Below are positions 530 through 10,988 of a DNA stretch of 10,988 nucleotides, in pieces. The position numbers and the translations under genes are program-made. The stretch spans positions 1 through 10,988 of the forward strand of contig NW_021827277.1 of the NCBI RefSeq assembly GCF_006345805.1, given 5' to 3'. Origin of the DNA: Octopus sinensis (taxonomy: Eukaryota). The notes under the pieces are model-generated. The model did not search any database and was not told where the DNA came from. It worked only from the letters and a program-made list of their open reading frames with translations. Position 1 is the first letter of the stretch. Each line of letters opens with the position of its first letter.

Positions 530-1120
530 CTTTCTGCCCCTCACAAACTTCCTCCACCATTCCCCTCTTTCCCTTTCTCTCTCAATCGCTATCATTCCAT
601 CACTGTCTCTGTCTGTCTGTCTCTCTGTCTGTCCGTCTGTTTGTCTGTCCCTTTCTCCATTTCGTCTCACTTCACATATATTCTCTCTCTCTTCCTCCTT
701 TCCTCTCTCTCTCTTTCTGTCTGTCAGTCAACCTATCTTTCCCTCTGTCTCTGTCCCTTTCTATCTAATTTCTCACTCACTATATACTTTCTCTCTCTCT
801 CTCTCTGTTTCTGCCCCTCACATACTTCCTCCACCATTCCCTCTCTCTCCCTTTCCCTCTCACTCGCTCTCGTTCAATCACTGTCTCTGTCTTCTTCTGT
901 TAGTCAGTCTGTCTGTCTGTCTGTCTCTCTCTCTGTCCATCTGTTTCTCTGTCAGTCTGTCTCTTTCTCCCTTTTGTCTCACTTCATATACATTCTCTCT
1001 CTTTCTTCTTCCCTTCCTCCTTTCTTCTCTCTCTTTCTGTTTGTTTGTCAGTCAGCCTATCTTTCCCCCTGTCTCTGTCCCTTTCTCTCTAATTCTCACA
1101 CACTATATATTTTCTCTCTT
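530..1120 (+). repeat. Old diverged tandem duplication (~280-320 bp unit, 2 copies) inside the CT tract
   Basis: ctgcccctcaca.acttcctccaccattccc occurs at 534 and 811. gtcagtca.cctatctttccc.ctgtctctgtccctttct occurs at 723 and 1047. Confidence 0.8.
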
Positions 1121-1895
1121 TCTCTCTCTCGCTCTCTCTCCCCTTCTCCCTCTCTGTCTCTTTATTTTCTCTCTCCTACTTCCACATCTCGCTCTCTGTG
1201 TTTCTTTGCTTATTTTTCTCTCACACACGTTGTCTCAATCTTTCTTACATTATCTCTCCCCCTCTCTCTCTATTACTCTCTCACCCTTAGTACTCCTACC
1301 CCTCTCTTTCTCTCTCTCGCTCTCTCTCCCCTTCTCCCTCTCTGTCTCTTTATTTTCTCTCTCCTACTTCCACATCTCGCTCTCTGTGTTTCTTTGCTTA
1401 TTTTTCTCTCACACACGTTGTCTCAATCTTTCTTACATTATCTCTCCCCCTCTCTCTCTATTACTCTCTCACCCTTAGTACTCCTACCCCTCTCTTTCTC
1501 TCTCTCGCTCTCTCTCCCCTTCTCCCTCTCTGTCTCTTTATTTTCTCTCTCCTACTTCCACATCTCGCTCTCTGTGTTTCTTTACTTATTTTTCTCACAC
1601 ACGTTGTCTCAATCTTTCTTACATTATCTCTCCCCCTCTCTCTCTATACTCTCTCATCTTCTCACCCTAGTAACTCCTACCCCTCTCTTTCTCTCTCTCG
1701 CTCTCTGCTCCCCCCTTCTCCCTCTCTGTCTCTTTTTTTCTCTCTCTCCTACTTTCCACACATCTCGCTCTCTGTTTTTCTTTGCTTATTTTTCTCTCAA
1801 CACACGTTTCTCAATCTTTCTTACATTATCTCTCCCCCTCTCTCTCTATTATCTCTTCACCCTTAGTACTCCTACCCCTCTCTTTCTCTGTCTCC
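1121..1895 (+). repeat. Tandem repeat, 188-bp unit, ~4 copies
   Basis: Unit starts (gctctct..) at 1131, 1319, 1507 and 1700. The marker agtactcctacc or a variant has its G at 1290, 1478, 1670 and 1866. Copies 1 and 2 read as identical; copies 3 and 4 carry increasing indels. Confidence 0.95.
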
Positions 1896-2077
1896 TCTCT
1901 CTCACTCCCCCTCTCTTACTCAGGCATCATAACAAAAGAACAACCACATAAATAGTCACCCTCTTACTACTTCCTCCGCGACTCATGCTGCTACTTCTGC
2001 TCCTGCTACTCCCGTAATGATAATAAAGATAAGAGTAAAATGATATTTCTCATATACAGCAACCACCACTAGTAACC

Positions 2078-3910: not shown

Positions 3911-4049
3911 TAAAAACAGCAGGAATTTTGTTGATGGGGAATGTGATGTTGACGATAAAATCTTGGAGGAAAAGATGACAAAATTTAAGAGAGAATAGAA
4001 AAGGCTACAAAGAAGTGACGTCACGTCAAGAGAGGTAAAAGTTCGTTGA

Positions 4050-4498
4050 AAGGCAGTCATACACATATGCGCATGCGCATATATGTGCATACTAATATAC
4101 AAATATATTTGCATATGTGTGTGTATCTATATATCTATATATCTATATATGTATGTACATACTTATATACACATATAGAGATATTGACATTAACAGGCTC
4201 GTGCATGAGTACATACACATCTACATACATACATACGCACATAAATATAGACATACATGCATATATATATATATACATATATAATTTAAACATATCTATA
4301 AGTGTGTATGTATATATATCCACATATATACATATATATATATATGTAAATATATATATATAATATATTATATATATATGCATATATATATGTATATATG
4401 TTATATATATGTATATATATATATGTATGTATATATAATATATGCATATATATATAATATATGTAAATATATATAATACATATATATATATACATACA

Positions 4499-4531
<33 letters not shown>

Positions 4532-4534
4532 ATG

Positions 4535-4569
<35 letters not shown>

Positions 4570-4632
4570 ATATGTACGTTCGTATGTATGTATGTATTTA
4601 TGTTTGTATGTATGTATGTATATATGTATGTA
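4050..4632. repeat. Compound (AT)n/(ATAC)n/(GTAT)n/(GT)n microsatellite
   Basis: Direct reading. It is the source of the I/Y/C/V/M/H pseudo-ORFs in all frames. Confidence 0.96.
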
Positions 4633-4844
4633 TATTCCTTCACAGAGAAAGTAATCGTAGTAGAGTAGCTGCGTGTGAAAGAGAAACGAAAAGTGGATTT
4701 CGATTGATGGTTTACATCAAAATATTTTGTCAAAGCACACATCTTTAGGAACATACATACATATATACGTGTGCACTTCCGCATTGCTCACACGAACATA
4801 CCATTTCACAGAATTATATTCATAGAAGGAATACATTTGTTTGA

Positions 4845-5109: not shown

Positions 5110-5546
5110 CATTTATTTGTTTCAGTCATTTCACTGCAGACATGCTGGAGCAGTGACTTTAGTCTATCAAATCGACCCTAGTCTTTTTCTTTGCAATCCT
5201 AGCACTATCCTATCGTTTCTTTTGCCGGACCTCTAAGTTACATTGACGTAAACACACCAACATCGTCTGTCAAGCGATGATGGGGGTATAGACACAGAAA
5301 AACACACGCACACACACACCACACACACACACACACACACGCTCTTTCTCTCTCTCTCACACAAACACACATTGAGATACACGCACACACACACACATAT
5401 ATATATATATACAATGAGCTTCTTTTAGGTTTTGTCTACCAAATCCACTCACAAAACTTTGGACGGCCCGAGGCTTAGTAGAAGACACTTGTCCAATGTG
5501 CCACGCATTGGGACTGAACCCAGAACTCTGCTGAAGCAAGCTTCTT
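5110..5546 (-). mobile_element. tRNA-derived SINE (second family), 5'-truncated, carrying an internal (CA)/(CT)/(TA) microsatellite
   Basis: The minus strand has a B-box-like gggttcagtccc (5510-5521), then gcgtggcacattggacaagtgtcttctacta.gcctcgggccg.ccaaa...gtgagtggatttggtagac, a microsatellite at ~5300-5412, and a 3' block ending tgactgaaacaaataaat. The layout matches an octopus tRNA-SINE from recall (OK/OR-type families are described in octopus; exact family not assigned). The A box is absent. Confidence 0.72.
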
Positions 5547-5549
5547 TAT

Positions 5550-5845
5550 TTCATGAAAATTGGCCATAAAGACCAATATTGTTAGAATATGTTTGGTTTG
5601 TAAATGAGTCCGTTCCTTCATGTGTTCGATATTTGATTGGTTGAATACCCAGTTTGGTTCCTCTTTGTTCCTTTAGTTGTTTGCTCTCTCGATTGGTCCT
5701 TAATTTGGCTGGCCCTTTCGGTAGTTGGTCGATGGCTTGGTCGCTTGGTGCTCACGACGGACGGTTAGACAGTTAGCGCAGTTGGCGCATAATTTTTTGT
5801 TGGTTGGTTGTTTCATAAATTGGTTGCTTGGTCGTTTGTTTGCAG
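5550..5845. repeat. Highly degenerate (TTGG)n-like tract; resumes at ~6582-6650
   Basis: Recurrent ttgg/gttggttggttg motifs with a T/G-rich + strand. The same texture appears after the RTE tail (cagttggttggttggtcgttggg). Confidence 0.6.
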
Positions 5846-5854
5846 CTTATCAAC

Positions 5855-6113
5855 ATCAACATCACCATTATCACCGCAAGCACCATCATCACCTGTACTA
5901 CCACTACCATCACCACCACCAACAACAACAACCCTACCACTACCATCAACATCATCATCCCCAAGACGACAACCACAACCACCAACAACACCAGCACTAT
6001 CACCGCCTCCAGCACCACCTCTACCAACACCACCAATATCAACGCCACCAACGTCTCCAACACTACCATTAACACTACCGCAACCATTGTCGCGTCCTCA
6101 TACGAAATTACCA
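5855..6113 (+). repeat. Dispersed low-complexity (ACC/ATC/AAC) repeat, copy A (inverted relative to copy B)
   Basis: 6054-6113 matches the reverse complement of 10241-10300 at 56/60. 5942-5974 matches rc 10350-10383 with 1 mismatch and 1 indel. 5855-5875 matches rc 10450-10470 exactly. Confidence 0.85.
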
Positions 6114-6125
6114 TTAACACTTAGT

Positions 6126-6575
6126 TATTCAAACTTAAAAATCTTCAAAGCCACAGTCGAACCAATTCTCCTATATGCCTCGGAAACCTGGACGTTATCA
6201 AAGAAGCTTGAGAGGCAGTTGGATGGAACCTACACTCGCCTCCTTATGAGAGCTCAAAATCTCTCGTGGAAGCGTCATCCAACCAAAGTACAAATATATG
6301 GGTAACTACCACCTGTGTCATCTCTTGTGAAAGGTAGGAGAGTCCAGTTTGCTGGACATTGTTGTAAAGCTGAAAACTAGGTAATTTCTACTCTTCTCCT
6401 CTGGAAGCCATCTACTCGCGATACCAGAAGGCGCACACTCTCCTACACTGATGTAATCTCCAGGGATACAGGCATCCAGCAACAGGACCTCCGTAATGCT
6501 ATGATGGACCGTGAAGTCTGGCGTAACATGGTAAACTCCATTGCCTCGACCACGGTCGAGCAATGATGCTGATGA
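6126..6575 (+). mobile_element. 5'-truncated RTE/RTEX-type LINE 3' end (post-RT C-terminal region), pseudogenised
   Basis: One frame reads LKIFKATVEPILLYASETWTLSKKLERQLDGTYTRLLMRAQNLSWKRHPTKVQIYG*LPPVSSLVKGRRVQFAGHCCKAEN*VISTLLLWKPSTRDTRRRTLSYTDVISRDTGIQQQDLRNAMMDREVWRNMVNSIASTTVEQ*. Premature stops are at 6303-6305 and 6378-6380, and the terminal TGA is at 6564-6566. LLYxSETW, LDGTYTR, RRxxFAGHC and DRxxWR are RTE/RTEX-type motifs. Tail: tgatgctgatga. Confidence 0.88.
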
Positions 6576-7009
6576 AAGCTTGATTGTTACACGATTGGTG
6601 TTTCGTTGGTTCAATTCTTGCACCTTCAGTTGGTTGGTTGGTCGTTGGGTTAAAGAAGATCAAATGCATATTATAACAAAATGACAGAACATCTACAGAA
6701 ATCACTTGGAAGTACGAACGATGATAGTCAAGTAAATGTCAAATATATTTCAGGGATGACATAATCACAGCGAAGTTTAAACTGATACTTAAAAAAAAAT
6801 ACCAAAAAAGCAAAAAAACTAATTAACAATAGTAGCATAGCAACAAACACCAACATAGCAACAGAAACGGCAACATAAGTTGTATTTTATTTTAAGCTAA
6901 AAAATAATGAGGTATCTATTAATTCATGTGTGACTCCATTTTATGGCCAATTTATAGACAAAAGATTTCTTTGTCTTATTTTTTTTATATCTAATCATAA
7001 AATAATTAC

Positions 7010-7107
7010 ATATACGTATAACATATGTGTGTATGTACATATACATATACATATAATTATATGTATAAATATCTATTATCTTCTCTGTGTATATATATAT
7101 ATGTGTG

Positions 7108-7141
<34 letters not shown>

Positions 7142-7239
7142 CATATATCTATATATCTTATATATATACATATATATATATATATATAATCTCAATATAT
7201 ATATATATCATATGTATGTATATATATATTACATATTCA

Positions 7240-7283
<44 letters not shown>

Positions 7284-7332
7284 TAAATATATATATATAT
7301 GTGTGTGGGTGTATATATATATATATATATAT
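7010..7332. repeat. (AT)n-dominated compound microsatellite
   Basis: Direct reading; includes a perfect (TA)17 at 7244-7277. Confidence 0.96.
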
Positions 7333-7379
7333 AGTTCTTATTGTCGCAATTATCTATTGTTGTCGACATTTACCACATT

Positions 7380-7660
7380 ATCTGCGTCATCGACACCATC
7401 ACCGTGATCATCGGTATCATCATCATCATCATCATCGGCATCGTAGTTTTCATCCTTCTCCTCCTCCTCCTCCTCATCCTCATCATCATGATCATCGACA
7501 TTAACTTCGTCTCCAGCGCAACCCTATAATGACCACCACCAGCAACAGCACCACAACCACAACCACAACCACTACAACCATTACAACAACAACAATACAA
7601 TAACCACCGCCATGACACACCACCATCGCTAGGACAACCACCCACCCACCCACCTCACAT
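7380..7660. repeat. Degenerate (ATC)n, (CCT)n, (ACC/AAC)n and (ACCC)n tract
   Basis: Direct reading. It is the source of the poly-H/P/I/M pseudo-ORFs. Confidence 0.88.
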
Positions 7661-7734
7661 TCGTTTATTACCGAGGTCATTATTTTTATACATATTACTT
7701 TTCATAAAGTAGCCAGTTCTATTTCTTTATTGAT

Positions 7735-7773
<39 letters not shown>

Positions 7774-8019
7774 CACTAATAATAATAATAATAACAACAA
7801 CAACAGCAACAACACCACCACCACTACTACTATTACTACTACCACTGCTGCTGCTACTGCTGCTACAACTATTATTATTACTCTTATTATTATTATTAGT
7901 AGTCGTACTACTACTACTACTATTACTACCATTATTATTATCATTACTCTTATTATTGCTATTATTATTATTATTATCATTATTATTATCATTATTATTA
8001 TCATTATTATTATCATTAT

Positions 8020-8052
<33 letters not shown>

Positions 8053-8279
8053 CATTACTCTTATTATTGCTATTATTATTATCATTATTATTATCATTAT
8101 TATTATCATTATTACTACTACTACTACTACTACTACTACTACCATTACTCTTATTATTGCTATTATTATTATCATTATTATTATCATTATTATTATCATT
8201 ATTACTACTACTACTACTACTACTACTACTACCATTACTCTTATTATTGCTATTATAATTATTATTATTATTATTATGC

Positions 8280-8373
<94 letters not shown>
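7735..8373. repeat. Compound trinucleotide array (CTA/AAT/AAC/TTA/ATC) containing a 90-bp higher-order repeat and a terminal perfect (ATT)31
   Basis: ttactcttattatt occurs at 7878, 7944, 8055, 8145 and 8235. Perfect 90-bp periodicity runs from 8023 to 8256. (ATT)31 spans 8281-8373. Confidence 0.96.
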
Positions 8374-8714
8374 TCACTTTTATTTCGCTTCTGTTTTTTT
8401 ATTTGTTTTTTTGTTTTGTTTTTTTTGTTTCGTTTCTTAACGTAGATAATGCGGTACTTCATTCATTTTCAAACTCCATTCAAAGAGGTCATCACCAAGG
8501 AATCACCAATATACAGTAGAATGACCTTCTGAGTGAAAAAGTCAACTGATTTTTTTTTTTTATCTTCTATTCCTTCGTAACATATTTGAAAGACGTTAAA
8601 CGCTTTTATACGCCAAATACTCAAGTCCTAAGCAAATTTTAGTCAATAATATTATAAAGCGTTTTTCCAACGCAAACGTTGGCATTTAGCCTAATTTTAA
8701 GGAAATTATGTTGG

Positions 8715-8723
8715 CAGGTGAGT
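8715..8723 (+). other. Candidate 5' splice donor CAG|GTGAGT
   Basis: Exact match to the U2 donor consensus inside a ~400-bp unique island. Polypyrimidine tracts with AG lie upstream (AG at 8444-8445 and 8591-8592). There is no transcript evidence. Confidence 0.3.
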
Positions 8724-8799
8724 TCGCCTTGCTTGGCAAAAGTCATATTCCAAAATGCCTTCGTATAGATTTGGGCTAAATCTGTGCTACACAGGTTTT

Positions 8800-9151
8800 T
8801 ATATATGCGTACGTATGTGCTGATGGCTATATAGGTGTGTACGTAATGATGTCTATGTGTGCGGATTTATATGCATATATATATATGAGTATGTACATAT
8901 ATATGTATATATATGTATATACATATTTCATACTTATATATATATGTTCATATATGTATGCATATATATATATATGTGTGTGTGTATGTGGTGGTTCATG
9001 TGTGTGTGTGCGTGTGGACATGTTAAGATATTTACAGACGTGTATATATATATATATATATATAGTACACTTACATATATAAACACAAACGCGTATACAA
9101 ACATACATACGTATGCATACACACAAACGCACGCACGCATATATATATATA

Positions 9152-9203
<52 letters not shown>

Positions 9204-9218
9204 ATGTATATATATATT

Positions 9219-9256
<38 letters not shown>

Positions 9257-9848
9257 ACAAAGTGGAGTTAGTTATGGGGTATATATTATATATATATATA
9301 TATATGAATGTAAATTACATATCTATGCATATATATATATATGTAGGTATGTATATACATACTTTGTATACATGTAAATATATATATACACATACTATGT
9401 ATATATGTATATTTACATACCTATGACAATGCATGTATATAAACATAATTATACATGCATATAATGATGTGTATATATATATATATGTATATGTATATGT
9501 AAATCTATATGTATATATATATGTAAATGTATATGTATATATATTATAATATATATATATATATAATATATATAGATATATATTATATATATATTATATA
9601 TATATACCTCTGTATAATCTACTGTAAATAATGAACGTGGTCGTCAGCACATCTATGTAACATGCATGCGCATACACATGCGCACCACGTAACGAACACG
9701 CATATGTATATATATATATTATATATAATATATATATATATATATATATGCACGTGTGTGTATATATATATGTATGTAAGTATATATTTGTATATGTCTC
9801 AAATATATGTACATACTTTATGTATTTATATTTGAATGTACTAAATAT

Positions 9849-9886
<38 letters not shown>

Positions 9887-9930
9887 CGTTGTGTGTGTGT
9901 GTGTGTGTGTGTGTGGCTGTGTGTATGTAT
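8800..9930. repeat. (AT)n/(GT)n/(CA)n compound microsatellite with a short unique interruption (~9605-9660)
   Basis: Direct reading. Confidence 0.95.
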
Positions 9931-10089
9931 GTAAGTGTTGTATTCCAGCACTGCTACTCTGCATCATCTGCTGATAGGAGCGGGGAGGTGTGTCTCTTTT
10001 TTTCTTGGCTAAATCTTGACGTTCTTTCAGAAGGGGAGATTTCATGTAAATGGCGCTCCTTAACTTATTTAGTCATTAGTCCTTTGTAA

Positions 10090-10988
10090 CGGTGGTGGCG
10101 TCGGCATGGGTGACAACGGCGATGGTGGTGATAATGGTGTTGGTGGTGGTGGAAGTGATGGTGGTAGTCACAGTGGTTCGATTCTAATGGAACGGGAGCA
10201 GACGGAGCTAAATTGTAATAACGTGGGCCATGAACCCGAGTGGTAATTTCGTATGAGGACGTGACAACGGTTGCGGTAGAGTTAATGGTAGTGGTGGAGA
10301 GGGTGGTGGCGTTGCTGGCGTTTATAGTGGTGGTGGTGTTGGTGGTTGGGGTTGTTGTCTTAGGGGATGATGATGTTGATGGTGGTGACAGGGATGTTGG
10401 TGGTGGTGGTGATGTTGATGGTAGTGGTGATGGTGCTGGTGGTTTTAATGGTGATAATGGTGATGTTGATTGCGGTGATGGTGATGGTGATGATGATGGC
10501 GGTTGTATGAGTGATGATGATGATGGTTATGGCGGTGGTAGTGCTGATGTTGATGGCGGCAGTGGTGGTGTTGGTGATGGTGATGGTGCTGGCGATGGTG
10601 GTGATGATAATAGTGATCTTATTGGTGGTGGTGGTGATGGTGATGATGGTGGTGGTGGTGGTAGTGTTGATAAAGATAGTACTGGTAACCATGCTGGTAA
10701 TCATTATATTATACAATTTTGTTATCGATGGTTGTTGTTGTAACTGATTGAAACACACTGGTGATTGTGGTTGCTGTGGTGGTGGTGGTTATCGTCATGG
10801 TAACGGCAATGTTCCTAATCATTGTTGACAATGACAGTCGACGTATGTGTTGTTGTTGGCAAAGGTCTTGTTGTTGACATTGTTGTCGATTCTGTTGCAG
10901 ATCACTGCAAGATGGCGGAGGGGGCAGTGGATGGTAGCGGCGATAATAATGTTGGTGATAACGAGGATTGTGTGGTGGTGGTGGTGGT
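10090..10988. repeat. Degenerate (GGT/GAT/GTT)n low-complexity tract running off the window end
   Basis: Direct reading. It is the source of the poly-V/G/D/M pseudo-ORFs. Confidence 0.93.
10241..10470 (-). repeat. Dispersed low-complexity repeat, copy B (inverted partner of 5855-6113)
   Basis: Anchor tggtaatttcgtatgaggacgtgacaacggttgcggtagagttaatggtagtgg. The ORF track also shows it: MVISYEDVTTVAVELMVV (+, 10240) versus MVISYEDATMVAVVLMVV (-, 5773..6120). Confidence 0.85.

What the first reader, a model, noticed from the sequence alone, without database searches (positions are those of the whole stretch)
5855..10470. Cryptic dispersed element disguised as microsatellite, present as an inverted pair 4.1 kb apart
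Seen: two tracts that look like independent (ACC)/(GGT) decay are colinear homologues over ~230-260 bp. There is a 56/60 complex anchor (gtcctcatacgaaattacca), a 33-bp block with 1 mismatch and 1 indel, and a 21-bp exact block. Two of the four anchor mismatches are CpG-to-CpA type. Simple-repeat masking would hide this family. Established: intronic inverted repeats form dsRNA that is edited by ADAR and can promote back-splicing, and coleoids edit RNA heavily. Inference: if transcribed, the arms could pair around the candidate exon ending at 8717.
Basis: partly seen in the sequence, partly recalled or inferred. Interest (0 to 1): 0.7.

Follow-up and report, generated by a model that had tools for sequence, protein, structure and literature searches.

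The report
Inverted copies of a decayed microsatellite
Two ~250-bp stretches that look like separately worn-out ACC/GGT microsatellites are really diverged copies of one sequence, lying in opposite orientation 4.1 kb apart in repeat-saturated, probably octopus, non-coding DNA; this is ordinary repeat biology, and I found no evidence for a genome-wide family or a function.

Summary
Window 5855-6113 aligns colinearly with the reverse complement of 10241-10470. There are 199 matches, 27 mismatches and 37 gap columns (K2P 0.13). The score is 225, against 45±8 for triplet shuffles and 40-90 for other ACC/GGT tracts in the window. The 56/60 anchor, the 33-bp block and the 21-bp exact block are all there.

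The "dispersed family" claim could not be tested. No third copy turned up in the window, in three DNA collections or in two protein-space searches. A control showed that the metagenome DNA collection lacks a second repeat from this window that I recall as an abundant octopus SINE, so its negative says little.

Internal evidence leans slightly towards a local, two-copy inverted duplication:
- The right copy sits inside a larger GGT tract.
- The left copy is an isolated piece whose homology stops at the 5' end of a truncated RTE LINE (6128-6577).
- A 90-nt imperfect-microsatellite block elsewhere in the window is duplicated at 100% identity.

The arms are not RTE 3' ends, not TIRs and not tRNA-SINE-like, and they have no target-site duplications.

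If co-transcribed, the arms could form about 202 bp of duplex (ΔΔG -296 kcal/mol). Transcription, editing and the "exon at 8717" all lack support. Interest is low.

The parts
5855..6113 (+). Left arm: a degenerate (ACC/ATC/AAC)n-type block of 259 nt. The ACC-rich strand is the + strand. It ends in the complex anchor.
10241..10470 (-). Right arm: the same block in reverse complement (230 nt; GGT/GAT/GTT-rich on the + strand). It begins with the anchor.
6054..6113 (+). Left anchor, complex sequence, 56/60 identical to the right anchor. It contains the exact 20-mer GTCCTCATACGAAATTACCA (6094-6113).
10241..10300 (-). Right anchor.
6013..6039 (+). A 27-nt stretch present only in the left arm. It is an in-phase indel and the largest structural difference between the arms.
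   Evidence: alignment coordinates; gap list.
6128..6577 (+). A 5'-truncated RTE-clade LINE fragment covering the last ~145 codons of the ORF. It reads in one frame with two in-frame stops and ends in the family's (TGA)n tail. Its 5' end abuts the inner end of the left arm. Patchy 14/23 similarity to RTE continues back to 6099.
10471..10720 (+). Distal continuation of the right GGT/GAT tract, absent from the left copy. It has internal periods of 18-60 nt and is more arm-like than other tracts (score 88-90).
10090..10240 (+). Inner flank of the right arm: a further GGT tract (10090-10175) followed by 65 nt of unique sequence (10176-10240). The left copy has no counterpart, neither before the arm nor after the RTE.

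Best explanation
The two arms are paralogous, non-coding copies of one ~230-260-bp block of an already-degenerate (ACC)n·(GGT)n trinucleotide tract plus about 60 bp of adjoining complex sequence. They diverged by about 13% (K2P).

Most likely this is a local, DNA-level inverted duplication with only two copies. The larger right-hand tract (10090-10720) would be the source locus. The left arm would be a secondary partial copy, laid down about 4 kb away in reverse orientation by template switching or break repair in a replication-unstable, simple-repeat-saturated region. Its inner end was either created or truncated when the 5'-truncated RTE LINE at 6128-6577 integrated.

Shown: common descent, the boundaries, the RTE junction, and block duplication of imperfect microsatellite elsewhere in the window. 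Inferred: the direction (right to left), the mechanism, and the absence of function. I expect the pair to be selectively neutral. If the region is transcribed as one RNA, it would incidentally form a long imperfect duplex.
For: - Homology is far beyond chance.
- The right copy is embedded in GGT tract on both sides. Its distal tail is more arm-like than other tracts (88-90 versus 21-57) and has internal periods of 18-60 nt. The tract looks grown in place.
- The left copy is an isolated block between unique TTGG-rich DNA and an RTE.
- Left-arm homology ends within 0-15 nt of the RTE 5' truncation point, with patchy 14/23 junctional similarity. The right-type continuation is not found after the RTE 3' end.
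- The same window holds a 90-nt imperfect trinucleotide block duplicated at 100% identity (8065-8154 = 8155-8244), with a third copy at 89%. A 188-bp unit is also repeated 4.1 times. Block-wise DNA duplication of repeats is therefore active locally.
- There is no target-site duplication around either arm, no tRNA or Rfam hit and no Pfam hit.
- The conserved sharp ends face inward, the opposite of a TIR element.
- No further copy was found in any searchable resource.
Against: - Copy number in the source genome could not be measured. I found almost no DNA close to this genome in the collections: the metagenome scan for a second window repeat, which I recall as the abundant octopus SINE, gave 0 hits. 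The absence of other copies is therefore weak evidence.
- In a genome reported as about 66% repeats with many unclassified families (PMC13282606), most pairs of 250-bp homologues at about 88% identity are interspersed-repeat copies.
- Inverted duplication of only 260 bp across 4 kb, with nothing else duplicated, is not a common rearrangement.
- Coincidence of the homology end with the RTE junction is equally expected if an RTE simply inserted into one copy of a family.
- No breakpoint signature supports the proposed mechanism: no TSD and no clear microhomology beyond 2-3 nt.
Confidence: 0.45

Rival explanations
1. Dispersed family. Each arm is a separate copy of an unclassified interspersed repeat. 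Read on the GGT strand, its body ends or begins at ...TGGTAATTTCGTATGAGGAC and is followed by a fixed, degenerate trinucleotide tail. This would resemble the microsatellite-associated families made by 3' fragments of non-LTR elements or SINEs. The two copies would lie close together by chance or by insertion preference.
For: - Both copies share a sharp terminus with unrelated flanks beyond it.
- The architecture of a complex head plus a trinucleotide tail of different lengths in the two copies (about 200 versus 480 nt) recalls retroposon tails.
- The RTE family in this very window ends in (TGA)n directly at its stop codon in all seven copies examined.
- RTE elements are known to seed microsatellite families (PMC2887409).
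- Octopus genomes hold many unclassified repeats (PMC13282606).
Against: - No third copy was found, though this is weak evidence.
- There is no TSD.
- The anchor is not the 3' end of the resident RTE family (nhmmer and pairwise tests). It is not tRNA- or SINE-like.
- The tails are colinear over about 200 nt. Tails regrown at each retroposition would not be.
- The right copy lies within more GGT tract on both sides, as if native to the locus.
- A chance neighbour within 5 kb needs roughly 10^4 or more copies in a 2.8-Gb genome.
Confidence: 0.4
2. RNA-level chimera. During RTE integration the reverse transcriptase jumped from the RTE RNA (at about 6114-6128) onto a transcript of the right-hand locus. 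It copied about 260 nt, giving a single insert made of arm plus RTE (5851-6577).
For: - The arm is fused on the same strand directly to the 5'-truncated RTE, with 2-3 nt (patchily 14/23) of junctional similarity.
- Arm-to-arm divergence (K2P 0.13) is similar to the divergence of the RTE copy from its closest relative (0.125).
- The left arm sits in a non-microsatellite context.
- From general knowledge, LINE template-switch chimeras are established for L1 (U6-L1).
Against: - No significant TSD flanks 5851-6577. The 5-nt AGCTT on both sides is at chance level.
- A retro-copy landing 4 kb from its source is an unexplained coincidence.
- None of the related RTE copies carries arm-like sequence upstream.
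Confidence: 0.07
3. Functional reading. The pair lies in an intron and is co-transcribed. It forms dsRNA that ADAR hyper-edits and/or that promotes back-splicing of an exon between the arms. This is compatible with either origin above.
For: - Cofolding of the arms predicts 202 intermolecular base pairs and ΔΔG -296 kcal/mol, against -137±7 for triplet shuffles. Uninterrupted helices reach 37 bp.
- Hyper-editing of repeat-derived dsRNA is widespread in Metazoa (PMC5625713).
Against: - There is no evidence of transcription.
- No exon lies between the arms. The only CAGGTRAGT (8715) has closed frames upstream and no matching acceptor or ORF evidence, and Pfam finds nothing.
- Non-homologous ACC and GGT tracts in the window also pair at -90 to -156 kcal/mol, so the duplex potential is not specific to this pair.
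Confidence: 0.1
4. Chance convergence of two independently decaying ACC/GGT microsatellites.
For: Both arms are low-complexity, and such tracts are common in the window.
Against: The score is 225, against a maximum of 82 in 1,400 triplet shuffles and 21-90 for other tracts. A 60-nt complex anchor matches 56/60, and an exact 20-mer has zero chance expectation.
Confidence: 0.005

Closest known systems
Microsatellite-associated repeat families generated by RTE-clade LINEs (Tay et al. 2010, PMC2887409)
   Same: A conserved complex flank is joined to a simple-sequence tract, so that 'microsatellites' at different sites are homologous. RTE elements with an SSR as their 3' end are present in this window: the fragment at 6128-6577 ends in (TGA)n at the stop codon, as do six relatives.
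   Different: The arms' anchor shows no significant similarity to the RTE 3' end. The simple tract is itself colinear between copies rather than regrown. Only two copies are known.
Local small inverted duplications or templated insertions from replication template switching or break repair, including rearrangements at LINE 5' junctions (general knowledge)
   Same: There are two copies, close together and in inverted orientation. One boundary lies at a LINE 5' junction with a few nucleotides of microhomology. The region is highly slippage-prone, as the 100%-identical 90-nt block duplication shows.
   Different: 260 nt is long for a templated insertion. No diagnostic breakpoint signature survives. 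The direction of copying is inferred only.
Inverted-repeat pairs of interspersed elements as ADAR substrates and circRNA promoters (e.g. inverted Alu pairs; hyper-editing across Metazoa, PMC5625713)
   Same: This is an inverted pair a few kb apart that could form a duplex of about 200 bp.
   Different: There is no evidence of transcription, editing or an enclosed exon. The sequence is low-complexity, so pairing is promiscuous with other tracts.

Membership tests
Interspersed repeat (transposable element) family | Three or more copies at unlinked genomic sites | tested here: inconclusive
   There are two copies in the window. The anchor gave 0 hits in metagenome and viral contigs and one chance-level hit in prokaryotic genomes. 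Two protein-space searches gave 0 hits. A control showed the metagenome collection also lacks a second repeat from this window, which I recall as an abundant octopus SINE.
Interspersed repeat (transposable element) family | Target-site duplications flanking each copy | tested here: not met
   The longest flanking direct matches are 4-6 nt and are reached by 50-100% of shuffles. The copies are about 13% diverged, so old TSDs could have decayed.
Interspersed repeat (transposable element) family | Structural hallmarks (pol III boxes or tRNA head, RT/transposase remnants, terminal inverted repeats at the outer ends) | tested here: not met
   There is no tRNA. No Rfam family reaches its gathering score. 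Pfam finds nothing. Similarity to the window's SINE is at chance level. The conserved sharp ends face inward, not outward.
RTE-derived microsatellite family (Tay et al. 2010) | The conserved flank is the C-terminal RT region plus the very short SSR 3' UTR of an RTE element | tested here: not met
   An nhmmer profile of seven RTE 3' ends finds only the RTE fragment itself (E = 8e-54). The arms give only weak tail-type matches (E > 1) and the anchors none. Pairwise scores are reached by 10-45% of shuffles. The feature is met by the neighbouring RTE fragment at 6128-6577.
ADAR-substrate inverted repeat | Long intramolecular duplex potential | tested here: met
   Cofolding predicts 202 intermolecular bp and ΔΔG -296 kcal/mol, against -137±7 for shuffles.
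ADAR-substrate inverted repeat | Both arms on one transcript, with clustered A-to-G RNA/DNA differences | not testable with these tools
   No RNA data for the source organism are available.
circRNA-promoting flanking inverted repeats | An exon with acceptor and donor sites lying between the arms | tested here: inconclusive
   One donor-like CAG|GTGAGT lies at 8715. All frames upstream are closed and no ORF or domain was found.

The most novel reading that the evidence does not exclude
The arms belong to a genome-wide cephalopod family of 'frozen' trinucleotide-tract elements that routine simple-repeat masking removes before repeat annotation. Where they sit as inverted pairs in introns, they would be an unrecognised source of long dsRNA for ADAR hyper-editing.
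Probability: 0.1. Interest if true: 0.45.

Novelty: new member of a known kind. Interest (0 to 1): 0.18.

Why it matters
The main value is methodological. The pair shows that tracts a masker would call independent simple repeats can be true paralogues. In simple-repeat-rich genomes such as those of octopuses, some repeat families or local duplications may therefore be missed, and microsatellite markers can be multi-copy. If the pair is transcribed, it would be one more dsRNA-forming inverted repeat among very many. Nothing here points to a new mechanism or a specific function.

Tried and rejected
It gave one junk hit (Elysia, 38% identity over 5% of the query).
2. An anchor-only six-frame composite and the left-arm frame-0 ORF against 1.84 billion representatives both gave 0 hits.
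3. The anchor 20-mer was scanned in metagenome, viral and prokaryote-genome collections. The only hit is one Clostridiales MAG, about the one hit expected by chance.
4. Fetching the window's own contig through three window ORFs failed; none is on record.
5. About 70 kb of RTE-bearing contigs (L002-L007) has no arm or SINE match. Only L002 is close (88% nt); the others are about 70-75% identical and probably come from other taxa.
6. The idea that the anchor is the RTE 3' end was rejected.
7. The idea that the right inner flank is a SINE or tRNA-like fragment was rejected.
8. The idea that the left copy continues after the RTE was rejected.
9. TSD searches for four insertion models were all at chance level.
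10. The idea that arm plus RTE is itself a repeated unit was rejected. All RTE relatives continue upstream as RTE.
11. Rfam hits are only sub-threshold miRNA-family matches to TA/TG low complexity.
12. A literature search for the SINE core string found nothing relevant.
Full report
**Observation.** The window is AT-rich and saturated with simple repeats. Within it, 5855-6113 on the + strand aligns colinearly with the reverse complement of 10241-10470. The alignment has 199 matches, 27 mismatches and 37 gap columns in six indels of 1, 1, 2, 3, 3 and 27 nt. That is 88% identity over ungapped columns and K2P 0.13, with 12 transitions (4 of CpG type) and 15 transversions, most of them A/C.

The Smith-Waterman score is 225. 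Triplet-block shuffles of the right arm give 45±8 (maximum 82), and with the anchor removed the score is still 173 against 54±8. Other ACC/GGT-like tracts in the window score 21-57 against either arm. Only the distal tail of the right tract (10471-10720) is higher, at 88-90.

- The 56/60 anchor has mismatches at 6060, 6074, 6086 and 6092, and the last two are CpG/CpA type.
- The 33-bp block has one mismatch and one indel.
- The 21-bp exact block is 5855-5875.

The 20-mer GTCCTCATACGAAATTACCA occurs exactly twice, once per strand, with zero expected. The tracts are therefore homologous by descent. Chance convergence is excluded.

**Anatomy and surroundings.** Homology ends abruptly at the inner ends (6113 and 10241), and the flanks beyond them are unrelated.

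The left inner flank is a 5'-truncated RTE-clade LINE. From 6128 to 6567 a single frame reads KIFKATVEPILLYASETWTL...MMDREVWRNMV...VEQ* with two in-frame stops. It matches 161 database proteins, the best at 87% identity. The nucleotide identity to contig L002 is 88%. All six related loci end ...GTCGA(A/G)CAA TGA (TGA)n. The family's tail is thus a short TGA repeat starting at the stop codon, which places the 3' end of the window copy at about 6577. Clear RTE homology begins at about 6120-6128. A patchy 14/23 similarity runs back to 6099 and overlaps the last 15 nt of the anchor. I read this as junctional microhomology at most, because the right arm has the same 15 nt with no RTE beside it.

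The right inner flank is 65 nt of unique sequence (10176-10240) followed by more GGT tract (10090-10175). Nothing resembling it follows the RTE on the left.

At the outer ends, the left tract simply stops (about 5851). The right tract continues for about 250 nt with internal periods of 18-60 nt.

No target-site duplication is detectable for the left arm, the right arm, the RTE alone or arm plus RTE. There is no tRNA, no Rfam family above threshold and no Pfam domain in any ORF of the region. The ORFs through the arms are the trivially open frames of a trinucleotide tract.

I could not settle it.
- The anchor is absent from the metagenome and viral contig collections.
- It gives one hit in 596 Gb of prokaryotic genomes, where about one chance 20-mer hit is expected.
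- As a control I scanned the metagenome collection for the core of another repeat in the window (5405-5545), which I recognise from memory as the very abundant octopus SINE. It returned nothing, so that negative says little.
- A six-frame composite of the arms was swamped by low-complexity candidates.
- An anchor-only composite found nothing at E≤10.
- An exhaustive HMMER scan of 1.84 billion representative proteins with the left-arm ORF found nothing.
- The window's own contig is not retrievable.
- About 70 kb of RTE-bearing contigs held no arm-like sequence, though only one short contig is close to the window's genome.
- None of the RTE relatives carries arm-like sequence upstream, so arm plus RTE is not itself a repeated unit.

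**Weighing the origin.** Several features lean towards a local two-copy duplication with the right locus as source:
- The right arm is embedded in GGT tract on both sides, and its own distal tail is the next-best match to the arms. The tract looks grown in place.
- The left arm is an isolated block between unique DNA and an RTE.
- Left-arm homology ends at the RTE 5' junction. The left copy was probably longer, or was created when that junction was repaired.
- The window shows ongoing block-wise duplication of imperfect microsatellite. 8065-8154 and 8155-8244 are 100% identical and 7975-8064 is 89% identical. A 188-bp unit is repeated 4.1 times at 1114-1903.
- The well-conserved sharp ends face inward, which excludes a TIR transposon spanning 5855-10470.

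Other considerations favour a family:
- Octopus genomes are reported as about 66% repeats with many unclassified families (PMC13282606).
- RTE elements are known to seed microsatellite-associated families (PMC2887409).
- On the GGT strand the arms have a 'complex head plus trinucleotide tail' layout.

However, the anchor is not the 3' end of the resident RTE family. Tails regrown at each retroposition would also not be colinear over 200 nt.

I put local duplication at 0.45, a dispersed family at 0.40, and an RTE template-switch chimera at 0.07.

**Function.** If both arms lie on one RNA they could form a duplex of about 202 bp. Predicted ΔΔG is -296 kcal/mol on the + strand transcript and -276 on the - strand transcript, with helices up to 37 bp. 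Triplet shuffles give -137±7. Non-homologous ACC and GGT tracts of the window also pair at -90 to -156 kcal/mol, so duplex potential is a property of the region rather than of this pair alone.

There is no evidence of transcription. The 'exon ending at 8717' is a single CAG|GTGAGT match with closed frames upstream. Hyper-editing of repeat dsRNA is general in Metazoa (PMC5625713). Editing would therefore be unsurprising if the region is intronic and expressed, but it would not imply function.

**Comparison and novelty.** The closest known kinds are microsatellite-associated repeat families (RTE-generated in Lepidoptera, PMC2887409) and small local inverted duplications. The pair works like any inverted repeat with respect to dsRNA. 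Membership in the RTE-derived class was tested and not met. Membership in 'interspersed family' is inconclusive on copy number and not met on target-site duplications or structural hallmarks. The finding is a real but ordinary feature, a new instance of a known kind. Its practical lesson is that simple-repeat masking can hide true paralogy.

Noticed in passing
window 6128-6577 (+): A 5'-truncated RTE-clade LINE fragment covers the last ~145 codons of the ORF, with 2 in-frame stops and no frameshift. Its tail is (TGA)n starting at the stop codon, and six relatives share that tail. The closest relatives are all on ENA metagenome contigs (best 87% aa, ERZ27289496).
   Followed up: yes
window 5405-5545 (+): This is a copy of what I recognise from memory as the very abundant octopus SINE (…GGCCCGAGGCTTAGTAGAAGACACTTGTCCAATGTGCCACGCATTGGGACTGAACCC…). 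It is the main hint that the window is from an octopus. No tool confirmed it, and its core pattern has 0 hits in metagenome contigs.
   Followed up: partly
L001 7770-7824 (Clostridiales MAG JAJQCB010000158) versus window 6067-6113: The single prokaryotic hit to the anchor 20-mer lies inside a 1139-aa Ig-like surface-protein ORF. It also shares the 13-mer CTACCGCAACCAT upstream at a 9-nt (in-frame) offset, giving VVISYED..AMVAV against the arms' VISYEDATMVAV. One 20-mer hit is expected by chance, but the extra 13-mer is roughly a 1e-5 to 1e-4 coincidence. No further similarity was found. I treated it as coincidence, and it remains unexplained.
   Followed up: partly
window 5795-5837 and 6601-6646 (+): A direct similarity (about 33/46) links TTGG-rich sequence shortly upstream of the left arm with sequence shortly downstream of the RTE 3' end. 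It scores 30 against 17.6±2.4, and 0 of 300 dinucleotide shuffles reach it. This could be a remnant of a long duplication flanking arm plus RTE, or just shared (TTGG)n-type low complexity.
   Followed up: partly
window 7975-8244 (+): A 90-nt higher-order unit sits inside the TAC/TAT trinucleotide array. 8065-8154 and 8155-8244 are 100% identical and 7975-8064 is 89% identical. This is a very recent block duplication of an imperfect microsatellite.
   Followed up: yes
window 1114-1903 (+): A CT-rich tandem array has a 188-nt unit in 4.1 copies with 93% matches. The whole region 1-2000 is strongly C/T-skewed on the + strand.
   Followed up: no
window 8715-8723 (+): This is the only CAGGTRAGT donor-like site in the window. 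An ATG lies 3 codons upstream (8708). All frames are closed further upstream, so there is no support for a coding exon.
   Followed up: partly
window 10890-10988 (+): An acceptor-like tctgttgcag is followed by caagATGGCGGAG..., a Kozak-like ATG, and an open G/D/V-rich frame that runs off the window end. It may be just more GGT-type tract. I did not examine it.
   Followed up: no
window 4040-4640, 7000-7340, 8870-9880: Dozens of sub-threshold Rfam matches hit repeat-derived miRNA families (mir-297, mir-3149, mir-1277, mir-466). All lie in TA/TG low-complexity DNA and all are far below gathering scores. They are artefacts of composition.
   Followed up: yes
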